IMG/VR virus record: IMGVR_UViG_3300037882_003354
Location: 124,001-188,000 of that record
Direction: 5' to 3' (one strand)
DNA length: 64,000 nucleotides
Shown: positions 14,781 to 33,783 of the stretch, in pieces
Numbering within the stretch: position 1 is the first letter of the stretch
Layout: the number at the start of each line of letters is the position of its first letter
Made by a program: the position numbers and the translations under genes
The notes under the pieces: generated by a model
What the model was told of the DNA's origin: nothing
The model's input: only the letters and a program-made list of their open reading frames with translations
The model's database searches: none

Positions 14781-15335
14781 ATGAACAAACGAATATCCTG
14801 CCAGGGACAACTGCTGGCCGCCAATCCGGTAAACCCTGCCGATGAACTCTGCAAGGCCGTCATCCTGGTGCTCAGCCACAACCCCGACCGGGCTATTGGC
14901 ATACAGATCAACAGCCCCCTGGAAAATCTCACACTACAAGCAGTGGCCGGTAAATTGGGCATAGAGTATGAAGGTGCAGACCCCATCTGGTCTGGTGGCC
15001 CAGCCGGACCAACTAAAATTCATGTCATACATAGTCTGGACTGGGCCAGCCTGAGCACTGTGCAAATCAACGAAGGAATTGGAGTCACCAGTGATGTGTC
15101 AGTGATTGCTGCACTCAGTCGTGGTGATGGCCCTGAACATTTCCGAGCATGTTCGGGATTCTGGATCTGGGAGGATGGACGTCTGGATCGGCAACTGGAT
15201 GTCCGGTCACAAGAGCCCTATACCTGGGAACTCAGCGCCGCCACCGTGACGTCTGTGTTCCAGGGCGAGGGCACCATGCAGTGGCTGGCCGTTCTGGAAG
15301 ACAGTGCCCAGCTGCAGATAGACAACTGGTTCTAA
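14781..15335 (+). CDS. YqgE/AlgH (DUF179) family protein
   Basis: LLAANP, AVILVLSH, AIGIQINSP, GGP, HVIHS, FRACSGFWIW..GRLD; TAAATA at 14769-14774. Confidence 0.8.
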   Translation: MNKRISCQGQLLAANPVNPADELCKAVILVLSHNPDRAIGIQINSPLENLTLQAVAGKLGIEYEGADPIWSGGPAGPTKIHVIHSLDWASLSTVQINEGIGVTSDVSVIAALSRGDGPEHFRACSGFWIWEDGRLDRQLDVRSQEPYTWELSAATVTSVFQGEGTMQWLAVLEDSAQLQIDNWF

Positions 15336-16822
15336 TCCCGCTCGGGGTTCACATCAGGCATGGTCAACATGCCGCGTATGCTGGCCGGCCGGCTGGATGC
15401 ATTGTTCTTGAACTTGTTGGCACTCATGCCCACAGTGGGATCAATGATCTCCCCAGTGGCATCGTCCACTGATGTGGTGCTGACCACGCTGGTACGCTTG
15501 AGTCCCTGATACGCACTATTACCACCGCCAGTGCTCTGCTGTGCTCGTTGTTGGCTGAAACTACTGGTGTCTTCATCCTCGTTCAAGTCTGTGATGCGCA
15601 GAGTGTCCAGGTTAAACTCCAGATCCACCTTCTGTCCCACACCACTACTGCTGCGTGTCTTCATGAACTGAATCTGATAACGACCACGTTCCTTCATGGC
15701 CCTGCTGGTAAAGATGCCAATGACATTGTCTGCTGTCATGATCTTGCTCAAGCCACCTGAAATGTGACTGTGGTCAAACTCAATCTCCTCCACTGCACTG
15801 CGATTCAACTGACTGGCAGTGACTGTGACACATTGCGTCTCCATGGCCAAGTTTCTGATCTCCTCACTCACGTATTTGTCCTTGACGAACAGATCACTGG
15901 GCGATACCTTTACTGACAGTGGCATCATCAAATCCAGGTAATCTATGAGCAAAACATCAGGTTTTACGCCTTTTTTCACCTGATATTCTTTAAGATATGC
16001 TCTGATATCGTTACAATTCTTGCCACTTGGCATGTACTTGATCTGTATGCTGCCCGCCTTCTTGCCCAGCATCTTGACCTTGAGTTCCACGTCATCAATG
16101 TTCTTGAAGATCTCGCGTGTGCTGATGCCTGTGGTCATGCTGTCCAGTCGCATGGCCACCAGACCCTCGCTCAACTCGAATGTCAGGTACAACACATTTA
16201 GACCCAGTTGCGCCCAGTTGACTCCCATGTTGGCCAGGAACAGACTCTTGCCGCCACCTGATCCTGCACAGAAGATGTTGAGCTCGCCGCGGTTAAATCC
16301 GCCATACAACTTGCGATCAATGCTGGGCCAGCCTGTGCTGATCTGCCCGTTGCCGTCTTTCAACTTGCTCAATCGACTGCGCGGATCTTCAAAGTAGTCA
16401 GTGCCCATGTCCTTGTTCAGACTGATCTGAATGGCATCCTTGATCAACTTCTCCACAGGTCCATAGTCTCCAGCCTCCAGCAGATCACTGCTCTTGATGA
16501 TGGCCCGCTCCAGGCCCTTGTGCCGGCTGAAGTTCTCAAACTCATCCATGAGCCATTCGTAGTTCTCACGGGGCAGGGTAATGGCATCGAAAGTGCTGCG
16601 TGTGGCTGCATTAACAATGCTGGCCTCGGGCATGACCTTGTATTCATCCACATACCGGTTGATAAACTCTGCGGCCGCCTGCAGACGTTGATCAAAGTTC
16701 TCATGATCAAAAATATTCTGACACCTGACAAATGTTTCAGCATCTGACAGGAACATCTCCAAATATAACTTCTGCATGGCAAAGTCATAGTTGGGTTTGA
16801 CCGCGGCTTTATTCTTCTGCAT
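15332..16822 (-). CDS. DnaB-like replicative helicase (T4 gp41-like)
   Basis: STGWPSID..LYGG, AGSGGGKS, LTFELSE, IDYLDLM, TASQLNR. Confidence 0.92.
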   Translation of the reverse strand: MQKNKAAVKPNYDFAMQKLYLEMFLSDAETFVRCQNIFDHENFDQRLQAAAEFINRYVDEYKVMPEASIVNAATRSTFDAITLPRENYEWLMDEFENFSRHKGLERAIIKSSDLLEAGDYGPVEKLIKDAIQISLNKDMGTDYFEDPRSRLSKLKDGNGQISTGWPSIDRKLYGGFNRGELNIFCAGSGGGKSLFLANMGVNWAQLGLNVLYLTFELSEGLVAMRLDSMTTGISTREIFKNIDDVELKVKMLGKKAGSIQIKYMPSGKNCNDIRAYLKEYQVKKGVKPDVLLIDYLDLMMPLSVKVSPSDLFVKDKYVSEEIRNLAMETQCVTVTASQLNRSAVEEIEFDHSHISGGLSKIMTADNVIGIFTSRAMKERGRYQIQFMKTRSSSGVGQKVDLEFNLDTLRITDLNEDEDTSSFSQQRAQQSTGGGNSAYQGLKRTSVVSTTSVDDATGEIIDPTVGMSANKFKNNASSRPASIRGMLTMPDVNPERD

Positions 16823-17807
16823 TTTCCAGTTTCCTCTTCAGTAGATGTAGATTTATCTCTCCACTGACCTTGTAGTGTAATATTGTGGACAACGTGTATA
16901 ACCTGCCGTATCGTTTCACAGCATCAGCCGCATCTTTGACATCTGACTCCCAGGGCGGCAAGCTCACGCTCCAGCCCTGATCGACAGCCACCTTGATCAT
17001 CTTGGCGCCCGCTCGATCACGATCAGGTACCACTATGACCTCCCGACCCAGGGAATTTATTCTAGCGCATTGTGTTTCATTGGGTTCATTGTGCATGATG
17101 GCCACTCCATCCACAGCAATGGCATCAAACTGTCCTTCAACTACTATAACAAATTTACGCTCGTTTGTCTGTCTATCCAGGTTAAAAACATAACCAGGTT
17201 GCGCATCTGTCAGGTACTTGGGTTTGCCGGGTGTAATCTTGCGACCAGTGTAGCCCACAATCTTGCCCTGATGATAGAAGGGAATGATGACTCTATCCCG
17301 GTAACCCTTGGCTGCACTCCAGTGCCAGTTGTACCAATCCCAGCCCATCTTGCGTTCATCCACCAGGTACGTGATTATATCAAGCAGTTCAGCTTCTTGC
17401 ATGCCCTGAGCTATCCATGTGTCCATGGGCAAACAGTCTGCAGGCAGAGGACGTTCCTCCAAGGCCAGTTGCAATGCTTTTTTGGATACAGGTTGATCGT
17501 CTTTGATCTTGAGTGCCAGCAGGTTCAACTTGCCTATGTCCATGTCACTAGCGCCCAACCATTTGAACAAATTTTTGGTATTCTTGCTCAGCAGCTTGCC
17601 CGGGGACCAGCCGGCTTTAAAATTACAGTTGAAACAACTGTATGCCCAGCCACCATCTGGGCTGGTCTTGATACCGCCTCGCTTCCTGTCATCCCTCTTT
17701 TCGCCGTTGTACGAACAACAGACCGAATTGAAACTATCCCACCCGCTGGGTGTGGATTTTCGATTGGGCGGCAGCAGTGAGAACAGGGCGGCCTGTATGT
17801 CGTTCAT
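16809..17807 (-). CDS. DNA primase (T4 gp61-like)
   Basis: Zn finger CC...CFNC, RVIIPF, GYTGR, TOPRIM VEGQFDA, PDRD, KDAADA. Confidence 0.9.
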   Translation of the reverse strand: MNDIQAALFSLLPPNRKSTPSGWDSFNSVCCSYNGEKRDDRKRGGIKTSPDGGWAYSCFNCNFKAGWSPGKLLSKNTKNLFKWLGASDMDIGKLNLLALKIKDDQPVSKKALQLALEERPLPADCLPMDTWIAQGMQEAELLDIITYLVDERKMGWDWYNWHWSAAKGYRDRVIIPFYHQGKIVGYTGRKITPGKPKYLTDAQPGYVFNLDRQTNERKFVIVVEGQFDAIAVDGVAIMHNEPNETQCARINSLGREVIVVPDRDRAGAKMIKVAVDQGWSVSLPPWESDVKDAADAVKRYGRLYTLSTILHYKVSGEINLHLLKRKLENAEE

Positions 17808-17812
17808 GCACT

Positions 17813-17841
17813 ATTTTAACACCTGTAGAGCACTTTGTCAA
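17813..17841 (-). promoter_or_regulatory. sigma70 promoter giving a leaderless primase mRNA
   Basis: TTGACA-17-TAAAAT-agtgc-ATG on the minus strand. Confidence 0.75.
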
Positions 17842-18652
17842 ATGAACCGTAATATGCAGGATTGTCGTTGTCAAATTCAGCAGGTGCAGTGGCTGGCACA
17901 TACATGATTCGAACATAGGAAAAGATGCCGTTGAAGTTTACATAATCAACACCGGTGAAGTCGTCGTAAGACAGTGTTTGTACAGTTACGTATCGATCAA
18001 AACTTTGCGGGCTGTTGTACAAGGTGCCCTGTACATACACGGTGCCACGGAAACCGGTCATGTACATGGCCATGGTGTGCAAGGCAGTGTTACTATTATA
18101 CTCTGGGCATGCATAAACATTACCGCTCTTGTGCTCGTACTGATTGGTAAATGAATTAAATGATTTGTTAAAACTCACGATCTCTTGGCTGGACTGTAGC
18201 ACAGGATTAATGTCTTCGGCCAAGTGAACAGTGCCAGCAACTCCGTAATAGGTGTTGGCGTAAGTGGGCAAATACGTGCCGTCATCAGGATCTCGATACT
18301 TGACGCTGAATTGATAACTGGACTTGGTGAGATCCATGGTGTCGCTTTCCGTCAGGGTCAGCAGGGCCAGTCCCCGTGTGCTGGTGTTGGTCTCAATGAC
18401 CTCCAGTTGCTTCTCCAGCACCAGCCGTTGGCTGATGGTGTCGAACATGGAGAATACAAATGTCTGCGTGTTGCTGATGGACACTCGCTTTTGATCGCTA
18501 TTCTTAAACTGAATGCGTACCTTGTTCTTGATTCCCTTTTGAATCTTGAGATCGTGCTGATACATAACTTGATTGACTCCTCGTACAGTGGGGTACAAAT
18601 CTAATATTACATCCAGATTGTTGTCATATAAATAGATTGGTAAATTTTGCAT
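17816..18652 (-). CDS. hypothetical, likely virion structural protein
   Basis: beta-rich; start MQNLPIY 5 nt after TAAATA (18658-18663). Confidence 0.7.
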   Translation of the reverse strand: MQNLPIYLYDNNLDVILDLYPTVRGVNQVMYQHDLKIQKGIKNKVRIQFKNSDQKRVSISNTQTFVFSMFDTISQRLVLEKQLEVIETNTSTRGLALLTLTESDTMDLTKSSYQFSVKYRDPDDGTYLPTYANTYYGVAGTVHLAEDINPVLQSSQEIVSFNKSFNSFTNQYEHKSGNVYACPEYNSNTALHTMAMYMTGFRGTVYVQGTLYNSPQSFDRYVTVQTLSYDDFTGVDYVNFNGIFSYVRIMYVPATAPAEFDNDNPAYYGSFDKVLYRC

Positions 18653-18672
18653 ACTAGTATTTATTGATAACA

Positions 18673-19056
18673 ATGTCAACAACCACCATCTTCCAAGAAA
18701 ACTATCCCTTTATCACCTGCATCAAGTCAAACGACATTGAATACGTGGGGTTGATCATCAATAACGATACCTATATCACCAGCATCTACGATATTGCAAC
18801 ATTACGTTCCGGTGATGAACGTCGCATTTTTTTGGAAATGGGAGAAGTATGGTGGTGGGAGAGCAACCGTAAAATACCCATCAACATATTTCTTAAAAAA
18901 GAAATGCAATTGTTCAAGTATACCATCAAAACTTTCAACAGCAAGGACACCGTTATAGTCTTCGGACCCACGGTAAATCTCAGTGAGATTGCCGAGAAAC
19001 GCGTCAAGCGCAAATCCATTCAATTGGTCAGGGTTCCCAAGCAGAATCTCGACTGA
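18673..19056 (+). CDS. conserved phage hypothetical protein
   Basis: WWWESNRKIPINIFL motif; TATAAATA at 18627-18634 upstream. Confidence 0.75.
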   Translation: MSTTTIFQENYPFITCIKSNDIEYVGLIINNDTYITSIYDIATLRSGDERRIFLEMGEVWWWESNRKIPINIFLKKEMQLFKYTIKTFNSKDTVIVFGPTVNLSEIAEKRVKRKSIQLVRVPKQNLD

Positions 19057-19618
19057 GGTTTTCACATATCAAATTCATCTGCATGACCACGGCATGTGCA
19101 TAGCCATAGGCATGGGATTTTTTCCATGAGTATTCCACAGTCTTGGTCCAGATGTCTGAGGCAATGGCCGCCCAACCCTGATGCGCACACACTGATATCA
19201 GATGCCGTTTTCCCGGTCTCAGCAGTGCCAGAAACATGGCCAATTGATCGATATTACGTGGCCTCAGTTCAGCCACCAGGTCATGATGACCATTGACATG
19301 AAATATCATGTCGGAAAACTCACGTTGCTCCAATAGTTCCCACATGGGTTCCACGGCCAGCAGCCGGTTGATATGAGTTTCGTCCTTGACATCCTGGTAC
19401 ACACCCACATTCAAAAAGTCTATCTTGAAATAACCCCGAGCCTGAGCCGCACGGTAGTCCATGCTGGCTGTGCCGGTCAAAGGGTTCACGGGAATTTCCT
19501 GGCAGTAGACACCAGTGTTATGACGCTTGACCGTTTTGCCATCATCAATGGTGGCTGGCACATGCTTGATCAACTCAAGTATGCTGTTGCGATCTCCAAA
19601 ATCAATGTCAATGTCCAT
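19028..19618 (-). CDS. miniature DNA polymerase III alpha (DnaE)-like protein
   Basis: MDIDIDF, RHNTGVY, FKIDFL, LAMFLALLRPG, YSWKKSHAYGY match DnaE motifs PDxDxD, HAxG, KxDFLG, AL.RPG, FNKSHA.AY. Confidence 0.75.
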   Translation of the reverse strand: MDIDIDFGDRNSILELIKHVPATIDDGKTVKRHNTGVYCQEIPVNPLTGTASMDYRAAQARGYFKIDFLNVGVYQDVKDETHINRLLAVEPMWELLEQREFSDMIFHVNGHHDLVAELRPRNIDQLAMFLALLRPGKRHLISVCAHQGWAAIASDIWTKTVEYSWKKSHAYGYAHAVVMQMNLICENLSRDSAWEP

Positions 19619-20384
19619 TGAGTGTCTGTGTTAGCTTGGTTAGATCAGCACAGGTGTACTGCTGATATTGTTTCTTTATATTGTCTGGCATGGGTATATA
19701 TTCTATTTTAGCACCATAATGCACGGCAATCGAGCGAGCCACTGCTTCAAATGATCTGGGCTTGCCAGTGCCCACATTCCAGATGCCAGATTCCTTGATG
19801 TCAAAAAACTTCTTATGCACATCAATTACATCATCCACGTGTACAAAATCCCTGAGGTATTGATCCGAGTTTTCAAATAATTTTATCACACCAGTCTCAC
19901 GAGCCTGCTTTTCAAATTTATAATAAGGGCTGGCTTGATCACCTTTGTGTTCTTCATGAGGACCGTGTACGTTAAAATACCGGAACCCCTGCACTCGGAT
20001 TCCGTTAAACTTGTTGGACAGCACATGGCGATCAAACAAATACTTGCTCCAGGCATAGGGGCTCTGTGGGCTGTGCGGTGCCTGCTCACTAAAATTTTTA
20101 CCCAACCCGTACACACTGGCCGAACTGGCATACTGCAAATTCACATTGTTGGTCTGGCAGGCCACCAATAATATGCAACTGAAGTCATGATTCTGTCGCA
20201 TGACTTTCTCAACATCAGTCTCAGTGGTGCTGCTGATGGCGCCCAGGTGTATGACCCAATCCAAACCTTCAAATTCGGGAATGGCATCACCCCACTCGTA
20301 ATAAGTCAGCTGGTGGTCGTCACGTAGTGCTTTGACCATGTTCTGGCCGATAAATCCTTTGTATCCCGTGATTAAAATTTTCAT
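19608..20384 (-). CDS. hldD: ADP-L-glycero-D-manno-heptose 6-epimerase
   Basis: TGYKGFIG, HLGAISSTTE, YASSASVYG, YAWSK, GFRYFNVHGP.E.HKG.QAS, RDFVHV. Confidence 0.85.
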   Translation of the reverse strand: MKILITGYKGFIGQNMVKALRDDHQLTYYEWGDAIPEFEGLDWVIHLGAISSTTETDVEKVMRQNHDFSCILLVACQTNNVNLQYASSASVYGLGKNFSEQAPHSPQSPYAWSKYLFDRHVLSNKFNGIRVQGFRYFNVHGPHEEHKGDQASPYYKFEKQARETGVIKLFENSDQYLRDFVHVDDVIDVHKKFFDIKESGIWNVGTGKPRSFEAVARSIAVHYGAKIEYIPMPDNIKKQYQQYTCADLTKLTQTLNGH

Positions 20385-20797
20385 TTGGTAGCCAATACTG
20401 CGTTGTAAATGTCTTGAACTTTCTTGGTTGTCGAATACAGGTCCAATCGATCATAGAATATGACTTCTTTGCAATGCTCTGCACCGATGATGTGCCGGCC
20501 TCGATAGTCACTGCCCTTGATCATGAGATCCGGTTCAAAGTTTTTTATCAGAGTGTCTAATTCTGTATCTGAGTCAAATATATCCACACGATCCACCGCC
20601 TTGAGCGCAAACAAGAAACTTGATCTTTCAAATTCGTTGTTGACTGGCCTGTGTTTGCCCTTGAGTTGGGCAATCCTTCGATCACTGTCAATAAGAACAT
20701 AAACGTAGGAGTCAGGGTGGCAACGGGCGTATTCCAATAATCGCAAATGGCCCACGTGTAATATATCAAATGATCCATTAACAATTATTTTTTTCAT
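20381..20797 (-). CDS. heptose-1-phosphate adenylyltransferase-like cytidylyltransferase (RfaE domain II / HldC-like)
   Basis: NGSFDILHVGH, SD..I..LKG..RP.N, KGSDY, STT. Confidence 0.8.
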   Translation of the reverse strand: MKKIIVNGSFDILHVGHLRLLEYARCHPDSYVYVLIDSDRRIAQLKGKHRPVNNEFERSSFLFALKAVDRVDIFDSDTELDTLIKNFEPDLMIKGSDYRGRHIIGAEHCKEVIFYDRLDLYSTTKKVQDIYNAVLATK

Positions 20798-21150
20798 TTT
20801 TGACTGTCCCCCGGCATCACTCGATAATTATCCTCCACAGAATCAGGTGTGCTGACTTCTATGATGGTGCCTGCCTGCAAGCAGGTGATACGATGCGGTA
20901 CCAGTGGATCATTATGATGAACACCACCTTCCCCGACAATTTTCTTATTCACTTTGGCAGTTAGGGTGTCAATGACTTCAATTTCAAACAGGCCACTCAG
21001 CACATACCAAGTTTCTTCTTTTTCAGAATGAAAGTGCATGCTAAACTTGCTGCCTGTATTGAAGTTAAGGAACTTGCTGCAATATTTGTCGTTGGTGACC
21101 CAGATGAGTTCTGAACCCCAGCCCTTTTCAACTTTTCCGTCTAATCTCAT
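20794..21150 (-). CDS. cupin (mannose-6-phosphate isomerase-like)
   Basis: KGWG.E, SMHFH..KEETWYV, PHR, EVST. Confidence 0.8.
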   Translation of the reverse strand: MRLDGKVEKGWGSELIWVTNDKYCSKFLNFNTGSKFSMHFHSEKEETWYVLSGLFEIEVIDTLTAKVNKKIVGEGGVHHNDPLVPHRITCLQAGTIIEVSTPDSVEDNYRVMPGDSQK

Positions 21151-21530
21151 AATTCTCCGCTTTCAGCCAATTTTAACATCAGGCTATATTGTTCGTAAGC
21201 CCGTCGTACAGACGGGTATTTTTCTTTCAAATGTTTTTCTTGTTCTTTTTGTTTCATGAGTATCTCAAACATTTGATGATGACCACGCTGTTGCATGTTG
21301 TTAAACACTTGTGATTCAAAATTTGCAATTCGTTCTAGTTCACTTTCTGCGATCTCTATAGTATACAATGGCTCGCTATCAACTACAATGTCTTCGTAAA
21401 CTCGATTAAAATCCGTGGGATCCTTGAAATAATTTACATTAACTTTGTGATATCGACTGGCTCGTTTGTTGGTGTCGATCACTTTAATGCCGTGTTGTTC
21501 ACAAAATGTTCTTAAATTTTCATTTGTCAT
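21147..21530 (-). CDS. hypothetical protein
   Basis: coupled ORF in the operon. Confidence 0.7.
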   Translation of the reverse strand: MTNENLRTFCEQHGIKVIDTNKRASRYHKVNVNYFKDPTDFNRVYEDIVVDSEPLYTIEIAESELERIANFESQVFNNMQQRGHHQMFEILMKQKEQEKHLKEKYPSVRRAYEQYSLMLKLAESGEL

Positions 21531-22228
21531 TTTATACCCACCTCATGACATATTTCTTTGACCAGGGCCACATCAGCCGGGGTCTCTCGGAATTTCTTCA
21601 TCCAGAAGGGAACATCAAATGCCGGTGCAATCATGTTCAACTGATCGTCGCTCATTTTCCTGACCATGGATTGGCCCACTGCGCTGTTCAAAACCATCCA
21701 GGGACTTATGCGACCATGCAGAATGTCGTGCACTGCCTTGTTCAGACTGACGTAGTTAAAGTAGTGAGCGAACTCTGCCTTGTGTTCATCGCCCCACTCC
21801 ATCATGGTCTGCAGGGTACGCTGTACCGCTGACTCAACCGGTTCAATCTTGATCATTTCAAACAAATATTTTTCGTACAGTTCATCTCTGCACCAGTGGT
21901 CCAATTTGACGCCACTCTTGATCACATAGTCAACAAACCTGTCAGGATAGATGGGATTGACGTTGTTGACAAAACTACCGAATTTTACAAACGCATTGTA
22001 ATAAGGGCTGTCGCAGAAGTCCTTGTACAGGATTTTTTTCTTGGAATTGTTGGTCAGTTGCCAGAATCTAATGAAGGCCGAGAACCCAGCCTGCACTCGC
22101 TTTTCTTTTTCCTGAAACGCACGACGCTTCTTTTCACACAGGTGGCTCACAAGTGTCTTGGGCTGACTGAATTTTTTGCCACAATAATCACACTGATGTG
22201 GTTGTGGCATGAGCAGGCTGTTACTCAT
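21527..22228 (-). CDS. hypothetical protein with N-terminal zinc finger
   Basis: CDYCGKKF......HLC. Confidence 0.75.
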   Translation of the reverse strand: MSNSLLMPQPHQCDYCGKKFSQPKTLVSHLCEKKRRAFQEKEKRVQAGFSAFIRFWQLTNNSKKKILYKDFCDSPYYNAFVKFGSFVNNVNPIYPDRFVDYVIKSGVKLDHWCRDELYEKYLFEMIKIEPVESAVQRTLQTMMEWGDEHKAEFAHYFNYVSLNKAVHDILHGRISPWMVLNSAVGQSMVRKMSDDQLNMIAPAFDVPFWMKKFRETPADVALVKEICHEVGIK

Positions 22229-22939: not shown

Positions 22940-23443
22940 TCACCAGCATTTGGTATAATCCACCAGTTCACTCTGGCGGCTGACTTCTTTGACAAAGTAT
23001 GCACACAGAGGTTTTTTACCTGCATGTAATGGAGTGCACAGCAATTGCCCGGGTCGCATTTTGGGAAAGTACCATTTGACATCTTGGTAGACATCGATGA
23101 TGTCTATCTCCAGTAATTCTGGTCTAAAACTGCTAAGTGGATTGAAACAGAAAGTTTTAAATCCGCGATCGTTAAGACTGGTGAGTGGCAGGATTTCCAT
23201 GTCCGGGCCCTCAGCATCACCCACAATGGTGCACCAATCCAGGGGCATGGTGATCTCGTGTGGTCCTATTTTTAGCACAACTGCTGGGCCTGTAAAACTT
23301 TCCAGGAAGATCAGGGGAATGAAAAAGTGGTCGGGGTTTTGATTGTCACTATTGTCCAGCACAGCAAATCGCAAGTCGTCATCAACTTCATCTGGCAGTT
23401 TATTGAGAAAGAATGTTTCGTTATCGAGCGTGAGTATTTGCAT
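22940..23443 (-). CDS. conserved hypothetical protein
   Basis: 167 aa, TAATG-coupled to uvsW. Confidence 0.75.
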   Translation of the reverse strand: MQILTLDNETFFLNKLPDEVDDDLRFAVLDNSDNQNPDHFFIPLIFLESFTGPAVVLKIGPHEITMPLDWCTIVGDAEGPDMEILPLTSLNDRGFKTFCFNPLSSFRPELLEIDIIDVYQDVKWYFPKMRPGQLLCTPLHAGKKPLCAYFVKEVSRQSELVDYTKCW

Positions 23444-24906
23444 TATTGGTATTTTACTTTCTCTATTGTGAATGGGTATTTGGCATCTTTGTAAAATCGT
23501 TTGCGTTCGGTCAGATGCCGCTTGGCGTATTTTGTGCTGGCAGTGATATCCCAGATGCTGACAAAGTCTTTGTCGTCGGCCTTTCTTATGCCCCGTCCAA
23601 TACTCTGTATAACACGGACAAAACTTTTCCCGGGTTCCAACAGAACCAGATTAAAAATCCGAGGGATATTAATACCCACAGCGGCAACACCATAGGTAGC
23701 CACAATAATCTTGTTATCAGCAGTCTTAATTTCGTCATATTCTTCTTTTCTGTCCTTGGTTTTAACTTCCCCAGAGACAAAAACACTACCTGGTATTTTT
23801 TCCGCTATGGCTCTTCCTGAATCAATTCGATTGACCAGCACCAGAGTGTTGCCACTTGCTGAGATGGTATTTACTAGTTCGCTGACATAATCCATGCGCG
23901 TGTTGTCTGTGACCAAATATTTAAGTTCTTCTGCATAACTGCCAAACTCTTTCCACTCCGCAGTCTGTATGATGTTCACATGACAGTTGCTCAGTACACC
24001 TTTCTCCTGCAACTCATGTGCGCTCACCCGATTGATCACCTCACCCAGGCTGGCACGGATGCTTTGGAATTCGTGATCGGCCTTGGGCACGGTGCCAGTC
24101 AGCCCCCATCTGATGGGAGCATGGGACAGATTGCGTGTCAACAAATTCCTCAACACGTCTGCTTTGGCCATGTGCACCTCGTCCACCATGACTGTGCTGA
24201 CACCTTCCAGCAACTCTGCCAGTGTCAGCAGTTCGGCATCTCTGCTGAAATCCTTGGACTTTTTATCCAGGATGTTCAGACTTTGCCAGGTGCAGATGGT
24301 GTGTGTTTTATCCAGATTTTTTCTATCACCATAGTACACACCCACATCCAGACCGCAGTTGAGGAAGTCTTCTTCAGTTTGTTCCACCAGACTCTTGTTG
24401 GGCACAATGGTGACCGTACGTCCATACTTTTCGCAGATCTTGGCCAGGGTGGCCGTGGTGATGGTTTTGCCAAATCCCGTGGCGATCTCTTGGATGCATT
24501 GTGGGTTCTTTAGGAACATGTTGACCACTTCCACTTGGTCATCACGCAGACGAATTGGTTGACCTGCAAATCGATGACCCACTGGCCATGTTTGCTCGCC
24601 CCAAAAATCTTCAAAAATCTCTTCAAACTCCAGTGCTGGGCTGGTGCGCAAGTCTTCCACTTCCACGTAATAGTTTTTACTTTCCAAGTATTCCAGCACT
24701 GGTTCTAACATGCTCAAGTAGGTGGTACCACCCAGTCCAAAGAAAGAAATGCTGCCATCCCAGCGACCCAATTTGTAACTGGGTCGGAATCTGGCCGATG
24801 GATCCTCGTACTTGAATTTTTTAACCAGAGCCTTGCGTGTATCGAGATCTAGATTCGATATCTTGACATTGACTTCGTCTAGGATTGTTACCCGTGCTGT
24901 GGCCAA
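23443..24906 (-). CDS. uvsW: UvsW-like SF2 helicase
   Basis: LRDDQ, ATGFGKT, DEVH, GLTGT, GINIPRI, IQSIGRG.R. Confidence 0.9.
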   Translation of the reverse strand: MATARVTILDEVNVKISNLDLDTRKALVKKFKYEDPSARFRPSYKLGRWDGSISFFGLGGTTYLSMLEPVLEYLESKNYYVEVEDLRTSPALEFEEIFEDFWGEQTWPVGHRFAGQPIRLRDDQVEVVNMFLKNPQCIQEIATGFGKTITTATLAKICEKYGRTVTIVPNKSLVEQTEEDFLNCGLDVGVYYGDRKNLDKTHTICTWQSLNILDKKSKDFSRDAELLTLAELLEGVSTVMVDEVHMAKADVLRNLLTRNLSHAPIRWGLTGTVPKADHEFQSIRASLGEVINRVSAHELQEKGVLSNCHVNIIQTAEWKEFGSYAEELKYLVTDNTRMDYVSELVNTISASGNTLVLVNRIDSGRAIAEKIPGSVFVSGEVKTKDRKEEYDEIKTADNKIIVATYGVAAVGINIPRIFNLVLLEPGKSFVRVIQSIGRGIRKADDKDFVSIWDITASTKYAKRHLTERKRFYKDAKYPFTIEKVKYQ

Positions 24907-26072
24907 TTGATCTCCATTTGCGCCGGCTGCTTGGAAAAGTTCACCAGATTTTCATGATTGCGAATAAACGCCTTGGTGGTATAATGAGCACTCTCAAAAC
25001 CCAGGTTTATGATACAATTAAATTTCATATTAGATTTTACAACAGTCTTGGGCAGCTTGCAACTGATAAAAACAATTTTGGTGGCATCCGTGATGGGTGA
25101 ATTAAGGTTTTGTGTTCGTACAAACTGGTTAAATTGCTGATGCCGGTCTGATGGCAATCTGAACATCACCGACATTTCTTCATCAGCAAAGCCTGCCTGT
25201 TTTAAGAAGTCATAGGCACACTGCGTGGTTTCAAGTTCATTACTGCCCGGAATAACAAACAGGCAGGGGCTCAGGTGTTTTACAATGTCTGTCAAACTGG
25301 ACATGTCCACTGTTTCGCTGTTGACATGGAATGATTCACCAGGGTCAAGATTTAAAAACTCCCTGGTGATGGGACAGATGGACTGGTTGTCCAACTGGTG
25401 ATTGATTGTTTCGTCCCAGGCGTAAATTCCTGCCCGCCTGCTTTCAAATACTGCTTCCAACACCGTGGTTGCCTGCAATCTGGGTAGGGCAGGACTCACA
25501 TTCTTATATTGTGGCATGCCCTGATCAAACACCAGTGTGGGCACATGTTGTTCAAAATCTTGCAGAATGGTGGAAATTTGAGACATGTAGGATTGTACTT
25601 CCTGGTCGCAAACAAATGCCTCCTGCTCCACCAATCGATTGAGGAAAGTCAGATTGTCTTCACTGACTGAAAATATCCAGGCCTTGTGTTCACCATCCCA
25701 ATGTGCAAAGTCCAGTGACTCCCTGGATTTTCGAATCAAGGCCAAGGTGTCTTCCCGGTAGGGAAATTCCACTTTGATGGCTCGTCCATACATGGGATAG
25801 TCAATCATGCTCAGGGACTTGATGGTGTTAACCGAGCGATGAGGGAATTTATATTGTGGGCAATCCAGGTATTGCTGAATGTCCTGACCCAACAGAGTGG
25901 TCAGTTGACCGGAGTATCGGTTGACCAGTTTTAAAGCCAGAGCAGCCTGCTTCTCTGTGAAGCCCGATTTACGATGGATTTGATCGTAGAAACTGGTGAC
26001 CACGTTGGTGTCCCAACGGTTGCATTTTACACCCAGAGTGGTCATGTACAATACCAAGTCTTCGATGGTCAT
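24888..26072 (-). CDS. hypothetical protein
   Basis: 394 aa ORF in the operon. Confidence 0.75.
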   Translation of the reverse strand: MTIEDLVLYMTTLGVKCNRWDTNVVTSFYDQIHRKSGFTEKQAALALKLVNRYSGQLTTLLGQDIQQYLDCPQYKFPHRSVNTIKSLSMIDYPMYGRAIKVEFPYREDTLALIRKSRESLDFAHWDGEHKAWIFSVSEDNLTFLNRLVEQEAFVCDQEVQSYMSQISTILQDFEQHVPTLVFDQGMPQYKNVSPALPRLQATTVLEAVFESRRAGIYAWDETINHQLDNQSICPITREFLNLDPGESFHVNSETVDMSSLTDIVKHLSPCLFVIPGSNELETTQCAYDFLKQAGFADEEMSVMFRLPSDRHQQFNQFVRTQNLNSPITDATKIVFISCKLPKTVVKSNMKFNCIINLGFESAHYTTKAFIRNHENLVNFSKQPAQMEINWPQHG

Positions 26073-28996: not shown

Positions 28997-31900
28997 TTAT
29001 TTCTTCAATCCGGCCAACTTTAAAATATCGGTCAACCCTTCGCTCATACCCAATTTTGCCTTTAGTGCCGCCAACCCTTCTGGGCTGGTGGGACTCTTTG
29101 TTCTTTCTTTTTCCAAATCTTTACCAGTTACTTTCCAGTCGCCACCCTGCGCTTTACGCTGCGCAGCAGGAATGTCGCTTTTGTTGGGGCTTTCGCTTTT
29201 TAATTTACCAGTACGCTCCAAATCATGCAGCATATCTATACGATCGCGGTAGCCGGCAACACCTGGTTTGATGTCATGTGCGGCCATGCGCTGTTGCACT
29301 GTGGGATTGTCTGCGTGTCGCATGGTGGTGTCATACTGATGACTGTGATCTGGATTATGTTCTTCAGAGGACATGATGTTCGTGTTGAAGTCTTCACCGC
29401 CATGGCCTTGATCACCAATGCCTTCCACTTTACCCTTGATTCGATTTAAGATTTCTTTCAATCCATCAATGGTCAATCCATCACCGCCCACTGGCTTGCC
29501 ATGACGCTCTTGGTATTCTTGTGTGAGTTTTTCCATGAACATGCCAGCCATCTGCTCAGCTTGCTCACCTGCTTGCTCGCCAAACATTTCTGAAATCTTC
29601 TTCTTGACGTCGATGACAATGCCTTCTTCGCCACGGAATGGTCCAACGTCTGGATTGTCCCTGTTGTAAAAACTTTTGACAATCTTGGCCACTTCTTTGA
29701 TCATGCCTTCTTTGCTCATCATTTTGGGAATTCCGCTGCCGTCCATATTTTCAGCAGCCGGTGTCGCAGGAGCCACTGGTTCGGCGGGCGCTGGTTCAGC
29801 AGGGGCGGGCTCTTGTGCAGGAGCCTGTGTGCCACTCATGCCCAGGGCCACAGTGAGTTCTGGGTAATTGTCTGTTGCCCATAATTTAAACACTTCTAGA
29901 GCGTTGGTTTCTGCATCAACATTGGCCATGTCTTTGAACTTGTCTTCTAGATCCGAATCCTCAATGCCCAGTTCGTTAAAAAATTGCCAGGCAGTCTGTC
30001 CATCTGGTCCCAGTTTTAATTCTGGACCCGACTGATCTTGTGGCAATTCTTCCAGTGCTTGCTTCATCAGGGCTATTTGATCGTCTGTCAACTTGCCCTG
30101 TTCGGTAGCATCTGCCCAGTCTTCAAAAGCATCGATGCTTTCGGCTGGTGACTTTTCTTTGGACATCTTCTCTGTTTCACGACGTGCTTTGTCACTGAGG
30201 TTAGTCACACGGCCACGACCGTCTTTCTTGGATGATGCTTTCCATTCGCCCTCATCTTTCCAACTGACTACCCGGCCAGTCTCATCTTTGGTCTCTGACC
30301 TTTCTTCCTGAACATAGTCTGCCAGGTCCACCTGGTTGACTTCGCTCATGATGCGGTGCAGCAATGGGAAATAGCCAGCCAGTTCTTCCTGGAAGGAACT
30401 CTGTGTAAATGTCTGCTTGTATTGTTCCATGGTGACCTCATCCATGGTCAGCCCGTCGTCCATCATGTCTTCTTCATTAAATCCCGCCATCCAGGATTCG
30501 TAGTGACTGCGCCGACCCAGGGCGGCCATCTGTGATTTAAGTTCATGCAGGCGGCCAATGGCACGCTCTGTGATGCCAGTGGCATCGTCATGTAAACTTG
30601 CATGCTGTACTTTGCGCTGGAATTCAGCCAGTTGAGCGATCTGCTCGCTCATGCCTATGATGGCCTTGCCTGCTGGATCATGCGGTGTGCCACCATGATC
30701 CACGTGTTGTGCCATGGCAAATGCACCGGCAGTGTGGATGAATGGATACTTGAATCGCTCGCCCTCTTTATTCTGTATGAAGATGGCCTTGATATTTTTG
30801 CGTTGGCTACGGCTGCCTGCATATTCTTCGTCCACTGCATGGGCGTGCCGCACGATGACTTCTGTTTTACCTTGCACGGCGCGGCTGGTTTTCCGGCTGC
30901 TTTTATTATTCCAACGACCTTCTTGTAAGCCTTCTGCCATGTCTTGCTGCCCAGCATCCAATCCTTTGCCGTACAAGGACACAGCGCGAGCGCCTGCTCC
31001 ATAGGGCGGATTTAGGTTGATACCCTGCCGGCCGTGTTCAACACCTATGGTATACCAATCAATTTTATCGGAACCACCAGCCTTTTGTGCTTGCTGTTTC
31101 CAGAAAGTCAAACTGTCCATGCCTTCTGACACGCCTTGTTCAGGATTCTCATCATGCCAAATGTGTTCATTTTCTTCACCATACACCTCGACAAAATCAT
31201 CAAGCGTCATGGTGTCTGCAGAAATCTTCATATCTTCTATTGATACGTTTTCCGACATGCCTTGCTCTGGAAGTTGTCCCGTAGGCCCCGCCATCTTGCT
31301 TCTTGGACTGCGGGTGATTTTGTATTTGGTTAGTCGATTGGTCTTCTTCATATTCGCAACGATGCGCTGGGCCTGGTCCACACTGTGGTATGTTCCTGCT
31401 TTTTCACCGTCCCTATAAATGTGATAGACATACTCCTTGTCAACTGGATGATCCAATGTGTAATTGACGGAACCGTCTGCTGCCGAGCCTTCCGACATGC
31501 CTTGCTGATCCAACATACTCGGCAAGCCCTGTGCCTTACGAGCCATATGACGGGCATAATCTACTTTATCGTCATTAACAACATCAACTAACTCGGCCAT
31601 TTTCTTTGCTATTAAGGCGTGTGCTGTTGATGGCTTATATTTTTTCATATTCAACTTTTTAGCAACATCAATGTAAAGTTGTAAATCATTGCCATCATCG
31701 CCACCGTTAAATCCATCCGGGGCAAATTCATTTAGAGAGCCTTCCGCCACATGGTGTCTAGTTTTTTTATTTTCGTTCATGGTGTTTGTATCCTGTTCTT
31801 TGGGGCCTTGTGTTGCGGCCAAATGTTTGAAATCATTTTTGTCCAGGTTGGTCTTGGCAATGTCCCTGGTGTCAAAACGCAATAGTCTGCGCTTGGCAAA

Positions 31901-32182
31901 ATATCGCATCTCTCTTAAAAAACCATACCACATGCGCCGCACGGGATCATCACGATTTTCAGTGATACCCTGGCTGTAGTAAACTTTTAGACTGCCCAGA
32001 TCCCCCAGGCTGATGCTCACGCGGCCCAGGTTGTTGCCTTCTATGACAAAGTCAAAGTCGAAAAATCTCGCTTGCGCGGGATCAATGGTGACTGCGCCTG
32101 TTTTGTCGCCCATTTCTAAATTACTGAAACGGCTGCGAACTTTATCAAACAGGTCTTGGCTGATTATTTGAATGGCTTCCAT
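28997..32182 (-). CDS. large acidic putative internal virion protein / polyprotein
   Basis: 1061 aa; late TAAATA 5 nt upstream; repeated QG(M/V)(S/A)EG; ends ILKLAGL. Confidence 0.75.
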   Translation of the reverse strand: MEAIQIISQDLFDKVRSRFSNLEMGDKTGAVTIDPAQARFFDFDFVIEGNNLGRVSISLGDLGSLKVYYSQGITENRDDPVRRMWYGFLREMRYFAKRRLLRFDTRDIAKTNLDKNDFKHLAATQGPKEQDTNTMNENKKTRHHVAEGSLNEFAPDGFNGGDDGNDLQLYIDVAKKLNMKKYKPSTAHALIAKKMAELVDVVNDDKVDYARHMARKAQGLPSMLDQQGMSEGSAADGSVNYTLDHPVDKEYVYHIYRDGEKAGTYHSVDQAQRIVANMKKTNRLTKYKITRSPRSKMAGPTGQLPEQGMSENVSIEDMKISADTMTLDDFVEVYGEENEHIWHDENPEQGVSEGMDSLTFWKQQAQKAGGSDKIDWYTIGVEHGRQGINLNPPYGAGARAVSLYGKGLDAGQQDMAEGLQEGRWNNKSSRKTSRAVQGKTEVIVRHAHAVDEEYAGSRSQRKNIKAIFIQNKEGERFKYPFIHTAGAFAMAQHVDHGGTPHDPAGKAIIGMSEQIAQLAEFQRKVQHASLHDDATGITERAIGRLHELKSQMAALGRRSHYESWMAGFNEEDMMDDGLTMDEVTMEQYKQTFTQSSFQEELAGYFPLLHRIMSEVNQVDLADYVQEERSETKDETGRVVSWKDEGEWKASSKKDGRGRVTNLSDKARRETEKMSKEKSPAESIDAFEDWADATEQGKLTDDQIALMKQALEELPQDQSGPELKLGPDGQTAWQFFNELGIEDSDLEDKFKDMANVDAETNALEVFKLWATDNYPELTVALGMSGTQAPAQEPAPAEPAPAEPVAPATPAAENMDGSGIPKMMSKEGMIKEVAKIVKSFYNRDNPDVGPFRGEEGIVIDVKKKISEMFGEQAGEQAEQMAGMFMEKLTQEYQERHGKPVGGDGLTIDGLKEILNRIKGKVEGIGDQGHGGEDFNTNIMSSEEHNPDHSHQYDTTMRHADNPTVQQRMAAHDIKPGVAGYRDRIDMLHDLERTGKLKSESPNKSDIPAAQRKAQGGDWKVTGKDLEKERTKSPTSPEGLAALKAKLGMSEGLTDILKLAGLKK
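30930..31756 (-). repeat. five 17-nt dispersed in-frame repeats, consensus CAAGGCATGTCGGAAGG
   Basis: copies at 30930-30946, 31122-31138, 31248-31264, 31488-31504, 31740-31756. Confidence 0.85.
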
Positions 32183-32193
32183 AGTATTATTTA

Positions 32194-33783
32194 TTAATAA
32201 CTGCTGATATAGATGGGCATGGGCAGGTCGTGTTCTTCCATGCCCTCCTGGTCTCGCATCTTTTCATAGATACTTGGGTCCCAATCCTGCAGGATCATGA
32301 TCATGCGTACAGCCAACAGCAGGCTGGACACCAGGTCATCGTGTTGTCCGGGTTTGGCCTTGAAACTCAAGGCTGCAGACACATATGTTTTGAGTTCACT
32401 GATCAGGCTCTTGCTGTGCAATTTAAGTTTTTTATTCTCAATCAGTTGTTTTAACTTGGCACAGGCATTGATCTTGGCCACATGTGTGGTATTAAATCCC
32501 TTGCGGAACCTGCGCACATGACCCTTTTTAACCGGCTCGCTTAAAAACATGCCAGGGAATGTTTCTTCTCCCAGCTCACTAATGGCCACCAGGGCCGCTT
32601 CACCTATGCTGTTGTTTTCCACACTGTAGTATATGCTGGGCACCAGGCCCTGCTTGGCACATTCATCCTCGATAAATTTCAGCAGATCTCTAAGCACACG
32701 TGCCTGCCCCTGCACCGGCGTGGTATTGTGGTTCCATTCACACACCTGTTCCAGACTGGGCACTTCTATGACTTCAATGGCTGCATAATCTCCACCAGTG
32801 CCCAGACTGGGATCCAGAGATACGATGTAGGTCATGGCAGGGTTCACTCGTTTGTACCATCGGGCCTGCCCCATTTTCATCAAGGGTTCTTTGCCTTCCA
32901 AATTGGACAGGGTGATGCTGTTAACCAAGGTTTCATCGAACACCAGGAATATGCACTCGTGTTCTCTTTGAAATCTTTCAGCCCCCACACGACTGCGTTC
33001 GGCCTCAGCCCAGATTTCGTCACGATCTGGATGTTCACTCCAGATGGCAATACAGGGGTAGAAACCATTCCTGCCCAGTTCGGTCCGATTGCCGTATTCG
33101 TCGAATCTCTTGTTGGCCTCGTTCCAGATCTGTGCAAACTGATCCTCGTCGCTGTTGGGGGTGGATGTGATGATGGCTTTACCGCCAGTGGCCAGGGTAG
33201 GGCTGATACTGGTCCAAAACTCAGTGGCAATGCCAGGTTCCACATAGGCAAACTCATCCAGATAGATCAAGCTCAAGCTCATGCCTCGTCCAGTGGTTTC
33301 AGTGGTAGTCTGTGCCACAATGCGGCTGCCATTTTCAAATTCAATACTCTGCTTGTTGTAACTGGTGACACCCGCACGTATCCAATCAGGGCATGTCTCG
33401 TATGCATAACGCAGACGTTGCATGATTTCCTGCGCACCTGTATATTTGTGCGCAGCAATCAGTATGGTGCTGTCGGGCACAAACATGGCATACCATAACA
33501 GGTAGCCCACCGCAGTGGTGGTTTTCCCCAGCTGACGCCCCAGCATGTTCACACTGAATCTGTGTTTGTGATAACTGTCCAGCAGCCGTTGTTGGTAGGG
33601 AAAGGGGGCGTATTGTATTTTGCCCTTGGTGGGGTGTTGTATAAAAAAGTAATTGGCTAAAAAATATTCAGGGCCAGTGTCAGCATGCTGGCATTTCATT
33701 AGATCCGCAATGTCCTGCTCAGAAAATTTCTGTGTGACATTGGCCTTTTTAACCAAGTTGCCGTCTAAGTTTTTTGATCCCAT
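32194..33783 (-). CDS. terL: terminase large subunit (gp17-like)
   Basis: GRQLGKTT, YLDEFA, ITSTPN, F.REHEC, DPSLGTGGDY, HDDLV. Confidence 0.93.
   Translation of the reverse strand: MGSKNLDGNLVKKANVTQKFSEQDIADLMKCQHADTGPEYFLANYFFIQHPTKGKIQYAPFPYQQRLLDSYHKHRFSVNMLGRQLGKTTTAVGYLLWYAMFVPDSTILIAAHKYTGAQEIMQRLRYAYETCPDWIRAGVTSYNKQSIEFENGSRIVAQTTTETTGRGMSLSLIYLDEFAYVEPGIATEFWTSISPTLATGGKAIITSTPNSDEDQFAQIWNEANKRFDEYGNRTELGRNGFYPCIAIWSEHPDRDEIWAEAERSRVGAERFQREHECIFLVFDETLVNSITLSNLEGKEPLMKMGQARWYKRVNPAMTYIVSLDPSLGTGGDYAAIEVIEVPSLEQVCEWNHNTTPVQGQARVLRDLLKFIEDECAKQGLVPSIYYSVENNSIGEAALVAISELGEETFPGMFLSEPVKKGHVRRFRKGFNTTHVAKINACAKLKQLIENKKLKLHSKSLISELKTYVSAALSFKAKPGQHDDLVSSLLLAVRMIMILQDWDPSIYEKMRDQEGMEEHDLPMPIYISSY

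What the first reader, a model, noticed from the sequence alone, without database searches (positions are those of the whole stretch)
19028..19618. 196-aa miniature C-family polymerase core, translationally coupled to heptose genes
Seen: the three catalytic-type aspartates (DIDID, KIDFL) and the RPG and KSHA motifs in correct order, but with the PHP domain, most intervening segments and the C-terminal domains absent. The ORF is intact and overlaps the hldD stop. Established: DnaE is over 1000 aa and its palm is a Pol-beta-like nucleotidyltransferase. Inference: not a simple fragment but a condensed nucleotidyltransferase or a decoy for host replisome/defence sensors.
Basis: partly seen in the sequence, partly recalled or inferred. 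Interest (0 to 1): 0.65.

Follow-up and report, generated by a model that had tools for sequence, protein, structure and literature searches.

The report
Half of a split mini Pol III
The 196-residue gene is a real, well-conserved half of a two-piece miniature DNA polymerase III found in giant phages; its other half lies about 145 kb away in the same genome, and the family was described in 2021, so this is not a new find.

Summary
The ORF at 19028-19618 (minus strand, 196 aa) is intact.

It is not a complete polymerase core. It is the C-terminal subunit, with the catalytic aspartates and reduced fingers, of the split minimal Pol III alpha of group 2.2 jumbo phages (Iyer et al. 2021, PMC7824862; PHROG 11778).

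The NTP-binding half of the palm is a separate 173-aa protein about 145 kb away in the same 322.5-kb phage genome. It ends six residues before the point in DnaE where this ORF begins.

The two halves co-occur in 93 and 96 phage records and are never adjacent. A complex model scored 0.90 against a best control of 0.01.

PHP, the beta-binding HhH domain and a DnaQ-type exonuclease are absent from the whole genome. A family B polymerase is present.

The family is large (at least 7,930 clusters) and under purifying selection (median dN/dS 0.14), so it is neither decay nor a likely decoy.

The heptose-like genes fill a variable slot, present in 3 of 55 related loci, so the overlap with them is incidental.

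DNA polymerase activity is inferred and has not been shown. Novelty: already known. Interest: modest.

The parts
19028..19618 (-). C-terminal subunit (196 aa) of the split minimal DNA polymerase III alpha: catalytic strand, remnant of the thumb region, third catalytic aspartate and shortened fingers. Its partner, the 173-aa N-terminal subunit, lies outside the window at G000:C1:289072-289593 (-) = L003:1498-2019 (-).
   Evidence: PHROG 11778 'DNA polymerase', E 5.3e-58, full length. Profile against PDB DnaE1, E 4.6e-4, collinear. VIA-align Z 9.8 to E. coli alpha. Partner: PF07733, E 6.6e-12, above the cut-off. Complex score 0.90 against a best control of 0.01.
19598..19615 (-). DIDIDF (residues 2-7). 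D2 and D4 align with the E. coli catalytic D401 and D403.
   Evidence: D2, D4 and D6 are invariant in 38 homologues. Catalytic roles as given in PMC8485763.
19412..19426 (-). KIDFL (residues 65-69). D67 aligns with the third catalytic aspartate of the KMDFL motif.
   Evidence: aligned to LLKMDFL of DnaE1. K65 and D67 are invariant.
19211..19219 (-). RPG (residues 134-136), a fingers motif, equal to E. coli 639-641.
19109..19123 (-). KKSHA (residues 166-170). S168-H169 align with E. coli S759-H760, and H760 is the proposed steric gate against ribonucleotides.
   Evidence: H169 is invariant.
19608..19618 (-). 11-nt overlap of the start codon with the stop of the upstream HldD-like ORF. Translational coupling is possible, but the arrangement is specific to this lineage.
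   Evidence: The same abutment is seen in the closest relative L091. Most relatives have other genes or the zinc-finger ORF at this position.

Best explanation
The ORF encodes the C-terminal subunit of a two-protein minimal Pol III alpha. This is the family typical of Rak2-, 121Q-, PA5oct- and Atu_ph07-like jumbo phages.

Subunit N (173 aa, encoded about 145 kb away) supplies the first part of the Pol-beta-like palm, with the GRGS triphosphate-binding loop. Subunit C (this ORF) supplies the catalytic strand (D2, D4), the third aspartate (D67) and a shortened fingers domain, with RPG and the steric-gate histidine H169.

The two assemble non-covalently into one composite active site. No intein is involved: N ends at ...EFLK and C begins at M(P)DIDIDF, six DnaE residues later.

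The heterodimer most likely acts as a small, distributive, dNTP-using DNA polymerase without proofreading. It would work beside the phage's family B replicase, in primer extension, lagging-strand synthesis or repair, within the primase-helicase-UvsW module where the C subunit gene sits.

What is shown: homology, the split, co-occurrence, selection, and a predicted interface. What is inferred: catalysis, the substrate and the biological role.
For: Identity of subunit C.

Identity of subunit N: PF07733, E 6.6e-12, positions 15-94 of 260. NCBIfam DnaE models align N residues 41-172 to about 271-393. The N profile 102-172 equals DnaE1 336-406, while C starts at 413.

Split conserved and ancient:
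- N is found in 93 phage records and C in 96, with the same taxa.
- The genes are far apart in Phosso, 121Q and four IMG/VR genomes.
- None of the 139 loci holds both halves.
- All 30 N homologues end at EFL(K/R).

Binding: ipSAE was 0.90, 0.91 and 0.90 in three runs, against a best control of 0.01. There were 174 contacts, runs agreed in at least 97% of contacts, and partner pLDDT was 90. In calibration the mark was reached by 58 of 80 solved complexes and 2 of 110 mismatched pairs; because my own alignments were used, those counts hold only roughly here. The N GRGS loop (138-139) touches the C catalytic strand (5-7). The pLDDT of C rises from 77 alone to 90 in the complex.

Selection:
- At least 7,930 clusters of 188-204 aa exist.
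- Median dN/dS is 0.14 over 208 pairs.
- Nine of the ten listed population variants in the ORF fall on third codon positions, and there are no indels.

dNTP use: H169 is invariant and aligns with E. coli H760, the proposed steric gate.

Context: the gene lies between UvsW and the primase and DnaB helicase. A PolB ORF of 896 aa is present in the genome.

Literature: PMC7824862 describes exactly this arrangement.
Against: - No biochemical or genetic test of the family was found in the searched library.
- The thumb (about 100 residues), about 85 residues of the fingers, the beta-binding domain, the OB domain and PHP are all missing. Stable grip on primer-template DNA is therefore uncertain.
- No DnaQ-type exonuclease is found in the genome.
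- The N-half model alone gave no significant Foldseek match.
- The one metatranscriptome laid did not cover the ORF.
- The complex score may partly reflect the model's memory of intact DnaE structures.
Confidence: 0.8

Rival explanations
1. The N+C heterodimer is an active Pol-beta-fold nucleotidyltransferase but not a templated DNA polymerase. It might add untemplated tails, modify nucleic-acid ends, or make a nucleotide signal or counter-defence product.
For: The thumb and the clamp- and DNA-binding domains are lost. The phage already has a full PolB replicase. Pol-beta-fold enzymes include many non-polymerase transferases (established knowledge).
Against: The fingers motifs that contact the incoming dNTP are retained, including the invariant steric-gate histidine equivalent. 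The gene is fixed in the primase-helicase-UvsW replication module across 55 loci. The closest structures are only C-family polymerases, with the next row at Z 2.9.
Confidence: 0.14
2. It is a catalytically dead decoy or scaffold that mimics DnaE, to titrate host replisome partners or defence sensors.
For: Its small size and loss of most DnaE domains. No direct evidence.
Against: All catalytic and nucleotide-contacting residues are invariant in the 38 aligned homologues, out of a family of at least 7,930 clusters. The surfaces that bind host partners, namely PHP for epsilon and the beta- and tau-binding regions, are the very parts that are missing. It pairs with a dedicated phage-encoded partner.
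Confidence: 0.03
3. It is a decaying remnant of a captured host dnaE gene, or an ordinary split gene rejoined by a split intein, as in cyanobacterial DnaE.
For: DnaE motifs in a short ORF. The other palm piece lies elsewhere in the genome.
Against: dN/dS is 0.14 and length is conserved at 188-204 aa. There are no intein-sized extensions: N ends at EFLK and C starts at M(P)DIDIDF. No further DnaE pieces are found in a complete genome.
Confidence: 0.02

Closest known systems
Split minimal DNA polymerase III alpha of group 2.2 jumbo phages (Iyer, Anantharaman, Krishnan, Burroughs & Aravind 2021, Viruses 13:63, PMC7824862; PHROG 11778 for the C half and 11127 for the N half)
   Same: Same two-protein architecture, same split point, distant genes, co-occurring family B polymerase, and a T4-like replication module. 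Identity to the C halves of Phosso, Atu_ph07, PA5oct, 121Q and RaK2 is 34-46%.
   Different: This copy comes from an uncultivated freshwater phage of 322.5 kb. In this lineage a heptose-like gene cassette sits directly upstream and overlaps the start codon.
Bacterial Pol III alpha (DnaE; E. coli 2hnh/5fkw, T. aquaticus 2hpi/3e0d, M. tuberculosis DnaE1 5lew)
   Same: Pol-beta-like palm with three aspartates, a GRGS loop (in trans), the RPG and KSH fingers motifs, and a collinear order.
   Different: About 370 aa in two chains, against more than 1,100 aa in one. No PHP, no thumb of normal size, about 85 residues of the fingers deleted, and no beta-binding HhH, OB or tau-binding domain. No epsilon-like exonuclease in the genome.
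Cyanobacterial split DnaE joined by the DnaE split intein
   Same: The catalytic subunit of a C-family polymerase is encoded as two distant genes.
   Different: No intein halves are present here and the split point is different, so the two proteins must associate non-covalently. The cyanobacterial case is recalled from established knowledge and was not tested here.
Full-length phage DnaE-type polymerases (group 3.2 jumbo phages such as Bacillus phage G; PHROG 405)
   Same: Distant homology. The N half hits phrog_405 at E 3e-11 and the C half at E 0.0058.
   Different: Those are host-like, single-chain enzymes with a PHP domain and act as the main replicase (PMC7824862). Here PolB is the presumed main replicase.

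Membership tests
Split minimal Pol III alpha of group 2.2 jumbo phages | C subunit of about 190 aa that begins at the (P)DIDIDF catalytic strand and carries the KxDFL, RPG and KSH motifs | tested here: met
Split minimal Pol III alpha of group 2.2 jumbo phages | Separate N subunit of about 175 aa with the GRGS loop, encoded at a distance in the same genome | tested here: met
   The 173-aa ORF at G000:C1:289072-289593. PF07733 E 6.6e-12; phrog_11127 E 4e-43.
Split minimal Pol III alpha of group 2.2 jumbo phages | Jumbo genome with a T4-like replication set and a family B polymerase, and no other Pol III domains | tested here: met
   A 322.5-kb genome with terminal repeats. PolB present. DnaB, primase, UvsW, UvsX, UvsY and gp32 present. 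No PHP or HHH_6.
Split minimal Pol III alpha of group 2.2 jumbo phages | The two subunits reconstitute one enzyme | tested here: inconclusive
   Prediction only: ipSAE 0.90 against a best control of 0.01, reached by 58 of 80 solved complexes and 2 of 110 mismatched pairs (counts hold only roughly, as my own alignments were used). No experiment.
C-family DNA polymerase (DnaE/PolC) in the strict sense | Pol-beta-like palm with three catalytic acidic residues | tested here: met
   D2, D4 and D67 are invariant and aligned to D401, D403 and the KMDFL aspartate.
C-family DNA polymerase (DnaE/PolC) in the strict sense | N-terminal PHP domain | tested here: not met
   No PF02811 match in the complete genome, while the control search rang in 14 of 14 genomes.
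C-family DNA polymerase (DnaE/PolC) in the strict sense | Full thumb and fingers, plus the beta-binding HhH domain, on one polypeptide | tested here: not met
   The 196 aa cover E. coli 401-784. The thumb region is cut from about 140 to about 38 residues, and RPG-to-KSH from about 115 to about 30. No HHH_6. The palm is split over two proteins.
C-family DNA polymerase (DnaE/PolC) in the strict sense | Template-directed DNA synthesis | not testable with these tools
   Needs a primer-extension assay.
Intein-split DnaE | Split-intein halves at the junction | tested here: not met
   N ends at EFL(K/R) and C starts at M(P)DIDIDF, with no extra residues, in 30 and 38 homologues respectively.

The most novel reading that the evidence does not exclude
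The N+C pair, about 370 aa in total, is a self-sufficient template-directed DNA polymerase and the smallest C-family polymerase core known. It would work as a primase-coupled primer extender that hands over to the family B replicase, by analogy with DnaE beside PolC in Firmicutes or with Pol alpha in eukaryotes. It would also preserve something close to the ancestral form of Pol III, rather than being a reduction of a captured host gene.
Probability: 0.25. Interest if true: 0.7.

Novelty: already known. Interest (0 to 1): 0.3.

Why it matters
Bacterial replicative polymerases are large. A natural version of about 370 residues in two chains, keeping only the palm and part of the fingers, would define the minimal catalytic unit of the C family. 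It would also bear on how that family arose, and could be a compact enzyme for biotechnology.

The family is abundant: at least 7,930 sequence clusters, and this phage's locus is held by lake and other freshwater metagenomes from 13 studies. It is strongly conserved, yet no functional test of it turned up in the library searched here. The open question is therefore its biochemistry, not its existence.

For this scan, the finding is a correct motif reading of a family that is already described.

Tried and rejected
- Single-sequence search of the ORF against PDB sequences found nothing. A profile was needed.
- Pfam gave only a sub-threshold fingers hit for the ORF. NCBIfam gave none.
- Foldseek E-values for the C model were weak, 7e-3 to 7e-2, although the top eight rows were all Pol III alpha. 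VIA-align gave the clearer separation.
- The N-half model alone gave no significant Foldseek match. Its assignment therefore rests on sequence profiles.
- A fused or adjacent N-C version was sought among 139 fetched loci and none was found.
- A DnaQ-type proofreader was sought as a third partner. None is in this genome. The ORF at the position of the 121Q 'exonuclease subunit' gene (24888-26072) has no family match.
- The conserved neighbours ORF233 and ORF130 were put to the ESM Atlas, with no functional lead.
- Expression: the single metatranscriptome laid covers neighbouring genes but not the ORF, which shows nothing either way.
- Later literature on the family was searched three times and nothing after 2021 was found. 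One malformed query each was corrected.

Full report
**Observation.** The window lies in a complete 322,512-bp virus record with direct terminal repeats, at G000:C1:124001-188000. The ORF at 19028..19618 on the minus strand is open and encodes 196 residues. DIDIDF sits at residues 2-7, KIDFL at 65-69, RPG at 134-136 and KKSHA at 166-170. The start codon overlaps the stop of the upstream 258-aa ORF by 11 nt. That upstream ORF is HldD-like: TIGR02197 gives E 1.3e-74 at 251 bits, just under the cut-off. The next ORF upstream resembles HldE domain II, with rfaE_dom_II at E 7.8e-29.

**Homology to DnaE.**
- The single sequence finds nothing in PDB sequences and only a weak Pfam fingers hit.
- A profile of 38 homologues (A1) hits M. 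tuberculosis DnaE1 at E 4.6e-4. There are four collinear patches: 1-13 = 413-425 (PDIDIDF), 51-136 = 566-664 (LLKMDFL to RPG) and 162-174 = 774-786 (FNKSHA), plus one weak patch.
- In E. coli alpha, the ORF's D2 and D4 align with D401 and D403, RPG with 639-641, and S168-H169 with S759-H760.
- D401, D403 and D555 are the active-site residues, and H760 is the proposed steric gate against ribonucleotides (PMC8485763).
- An AlphaFold2 model has mean pLDDT 76.9. It is low for residues 1-70 and high for 75-190.
- Foldseek's top eight rows for that model are all Pol III alpha.
- In VIA-align the top nine rows are all C-family polymerases. E. coli 2hnh gives Z 9.8, rmsd 2.9 over 115 residues, model 71-191 = chain 559-784. 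For 5fkw, model 1-190 = chain 401-781. The next unrelated row has Z 2.9.
- The 196 residues thus span what takes about 384 residues in E. coli alpha. The thumb region and a block between RPG and KSH are cut out.

**The other half.** A search of the whole phage genome with PF07733 found one match outside the window, in a 173-aa ORF at G000:C1:289072-289593 (minus strand; L003:1498-2019).
- It passes the Pfam cut-off: E 6.6e-12, profile positions 15-94 of 260.
- It hits several NCBIfam DnaE models over residues 41-172, roughly DnaE 271-393.
- It belongs to PHROG 11127, 'DNA polymerase', at E 4e-43.
- Its conserved core is the GRGS nucleotide-binding segment.
- A profile of 30 homologues (A2) aligns 102-172 to DnaE1 336-406.
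- The C protein begins at DnaE1 413, so the break falls in a six-residue gap.
- All N homologues end at EFL(K/R), and C homologues start at M(P)DIDIDF. No intein-like extension exists.

**Nothing else of DnaE is encoded.** No PHP domain, no HHH_6 beta-binding domain, no second fingers match and no RNase_T/DnaQ exonuclease are found. Control genomes gave the expected matches in each of these searches. An 896-aa family B polymerase ORF is present.

**Distribution and selection.**
- The C protein matches 96 phage records and the N protein 93, with the same taxon tallies. All listed hosts are Gram-negative bacteria. The phages are the Rak2, 121Q, PA5oct, Atu_ph07, Phosso and XacN1 kinds.
- The two genes are far apart in Phosso (97 kb and 321 kb), in 121Q (44 kb and 13 kb) and in four large IMG/VR records. 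All three near-complete records that have N also have C.
- None of the 139 fetched loci holds both halves.
- The word-index search scored 7,930 clusters at E <= 1e-5. The 120 best listed are 188-204 aa long.
- Nei-Gojobori dN/dS over 208 pairs with dS 0.1-1.5 has a median of 0.14 and a range of 0.06-0.26. The window against its closest relative gives about 0.11.
- Public lake and freshwater metagenomes from 13 studies hold the locus. One lake contig spans 17800-21600 at about 98.7% identity with no indels. Nine of the ten listed variant sites inside the ORF are third codon positions.

**Do the halves bind?** The complex predictor gave ipSAE of 0.90, 0.91 and 0.90 in three runs, against a best control of 0.01. 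There were 174 contacts, at least 97% agreement between runs, and partner pLDDT of 90. In calibration that mark was reached by 58 of 80 solved complexes and 2 of 110 mismatched pairs; because my own alignments were used, those counts hold only roughly here. The N GRGS loop (138-139) touches the C catalytic strand (5-7), and N 73-78 pairs with C strands around 18-19 and 39-42. This is what a single palm domain divided between two chains would look like. The model supports binding but does not show it, and it may draw on memory of intact DnaE structures.

**Context.**
- The gene sits in a conserved replication module: DnaB-type helicase (15332-16822), primase (16809-17807), a virion structural protein (17816-18682) and a convergent 130-aa ORF (18664-19056).
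- Then comes the C subunit, followed by a variable slot, a zinc-finger-like 233-aa ORF (21527-22228) and small ORFs.
- Beyond those lie UvsW (23443-24906), UvsY-like, RecA/UvsX-like and gp32-like genes. The order is the same in 121Q and Phosso.
- Across 55 related loci the 233-aa ORF is present in 52, the convergent ORF in 50 and the primase in 40. Heptose-like genes appear in only 3.
- The cassette also has a lower G+C content, 43.9% against 49.9%.
- The coupling to heptose genes is therefore a local insertion into a variable slot, not part of the polymerase system.

**Literature.** Iyer et al. [quoted passage not shown] It accompanies a family B polymerase, with no other Pol III domains, and they suggest a role in synthesis of one strand or in repair. 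Several GenBank records already label both halves as DnaE-like. Three searches found no later functional study. A 2026 survey of bacterial polymerases discarded fragments under 200 residues.

**Mechanism.**
- Shown: homology of both halves to the DnaE palm and fingers; the exact split point; co-occurrence; purifying selection; absence of the other domains.
- Predicted: an extensive interface between the halves.
- Inferred: the heterodimer forms one active site, uses dNTPs (the steric-gate histidine equivalent is invariant), and synthesises DNA distributively and without proofreading beside PolB. Given its fixed place next to the primase and helicase, this may be in primer extension or repair.

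**Rivals.**
- A non-templated transferase role is not excluded.
- A decoy is unlikely, because the catalytic residues are invariant and the host-partner surfaces are the missing parts.
- Decay and intein splicing are refuted.

**Verdict.** The family is already known. Interest is modest, and rests on the untested biochemistry of a minimal C-family polymerase.

Noticed in passing
window 19608-21150 (-): A three-gene sugar-nucleotide cassette. It has an HldD-like epimerase of 258 aa (shorter than the 316-position model), an HldE-domain-II-like adenylyltransferase of 138 aa, and a 118-aa cupin with weak likeness to mannose-6-phosphate isomerase. It fills a variable slot: it is present in only 3 of 55 related loci and has lower G+C (43.9% against 49.9%). 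A freshwater metatranscriptome contig lies on 20393-20592. It may be an auxiliary gene set for ADP-heptose-type sugar activation.
   Followed up: partly
L003:378-851 (-) = about G000:C1:287952-288425: A second HldE-domain-II-like adenylyltransferase (157 aa, rfaE_dom_II E 1.2e-21). It lies about 650 bp from the N-half gene of the mini polymerase, so each half has such a gene nearby in this genome. This may well be coincidence.
   Followed up: no
window 18664-19056 (+): A convergent 130-aa ORF (phrog_11637, unknown function) overlaps the 3' end of the polymerase C-half gene by 29 nt. It is conserved in 50 of 55 related loci, and some GenBank records annotate it as a membrane protein. The ESM Atlas search gave no lead.
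   Followed up: partly
window 21527-22228 (-): A 233-aa protein with a weak C2H2 zinc-finger match at its N-terminus (phrog_11058, unknown function). It is the near-constant upstream neighbour of the C-half gene, present in 52 of 55 loci and often directly abutting it. It is a candidate accessory factor, untested.
   Followed up: partly
window 14781-15335 (+): An AlgH-like DUF179 protein (PF02622, E 4e-21) is encoded next to the DnaB-type helicase, on the opposite strand. This is a bacterial-type gene in a phage replication region.
   Followed up: no
window 24888-26072 (-): A 394-aa ORF with no Pfam match and only a faint PHROG match. It occupies the position where phage 121Q has a gene annotated 'DNA polymerase exonuclease subunit'. 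The whole genome has no RNase_T/DnaQ match.
   Followed up: partly
window 28997-32182 (-): A 1,061-aa ORF without any Pfam match, lying between the gp32-like SSB gene and the large terminase gene (32194-33783).
   Followed up: no
window 17800-21600: The phage is widespread in lake and other freshwater metagenomes: 20 runs from 13 studies hold part of the stretch. One lake contig is about 98.7% identical over the whole 3.8 kb, with the same gene order.
   Followed up: yes
phage record OQ508957.1 (Alishewanella phage Slickus01, 141,644 bp): A distant C-half homologue (27% identity over residues 33-184) in a phage well below the 200-kb jumbo size. The family may therefore not be confined to jumbo genomes. 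Whether this phage has the N half was not checked.
   Followed up: no
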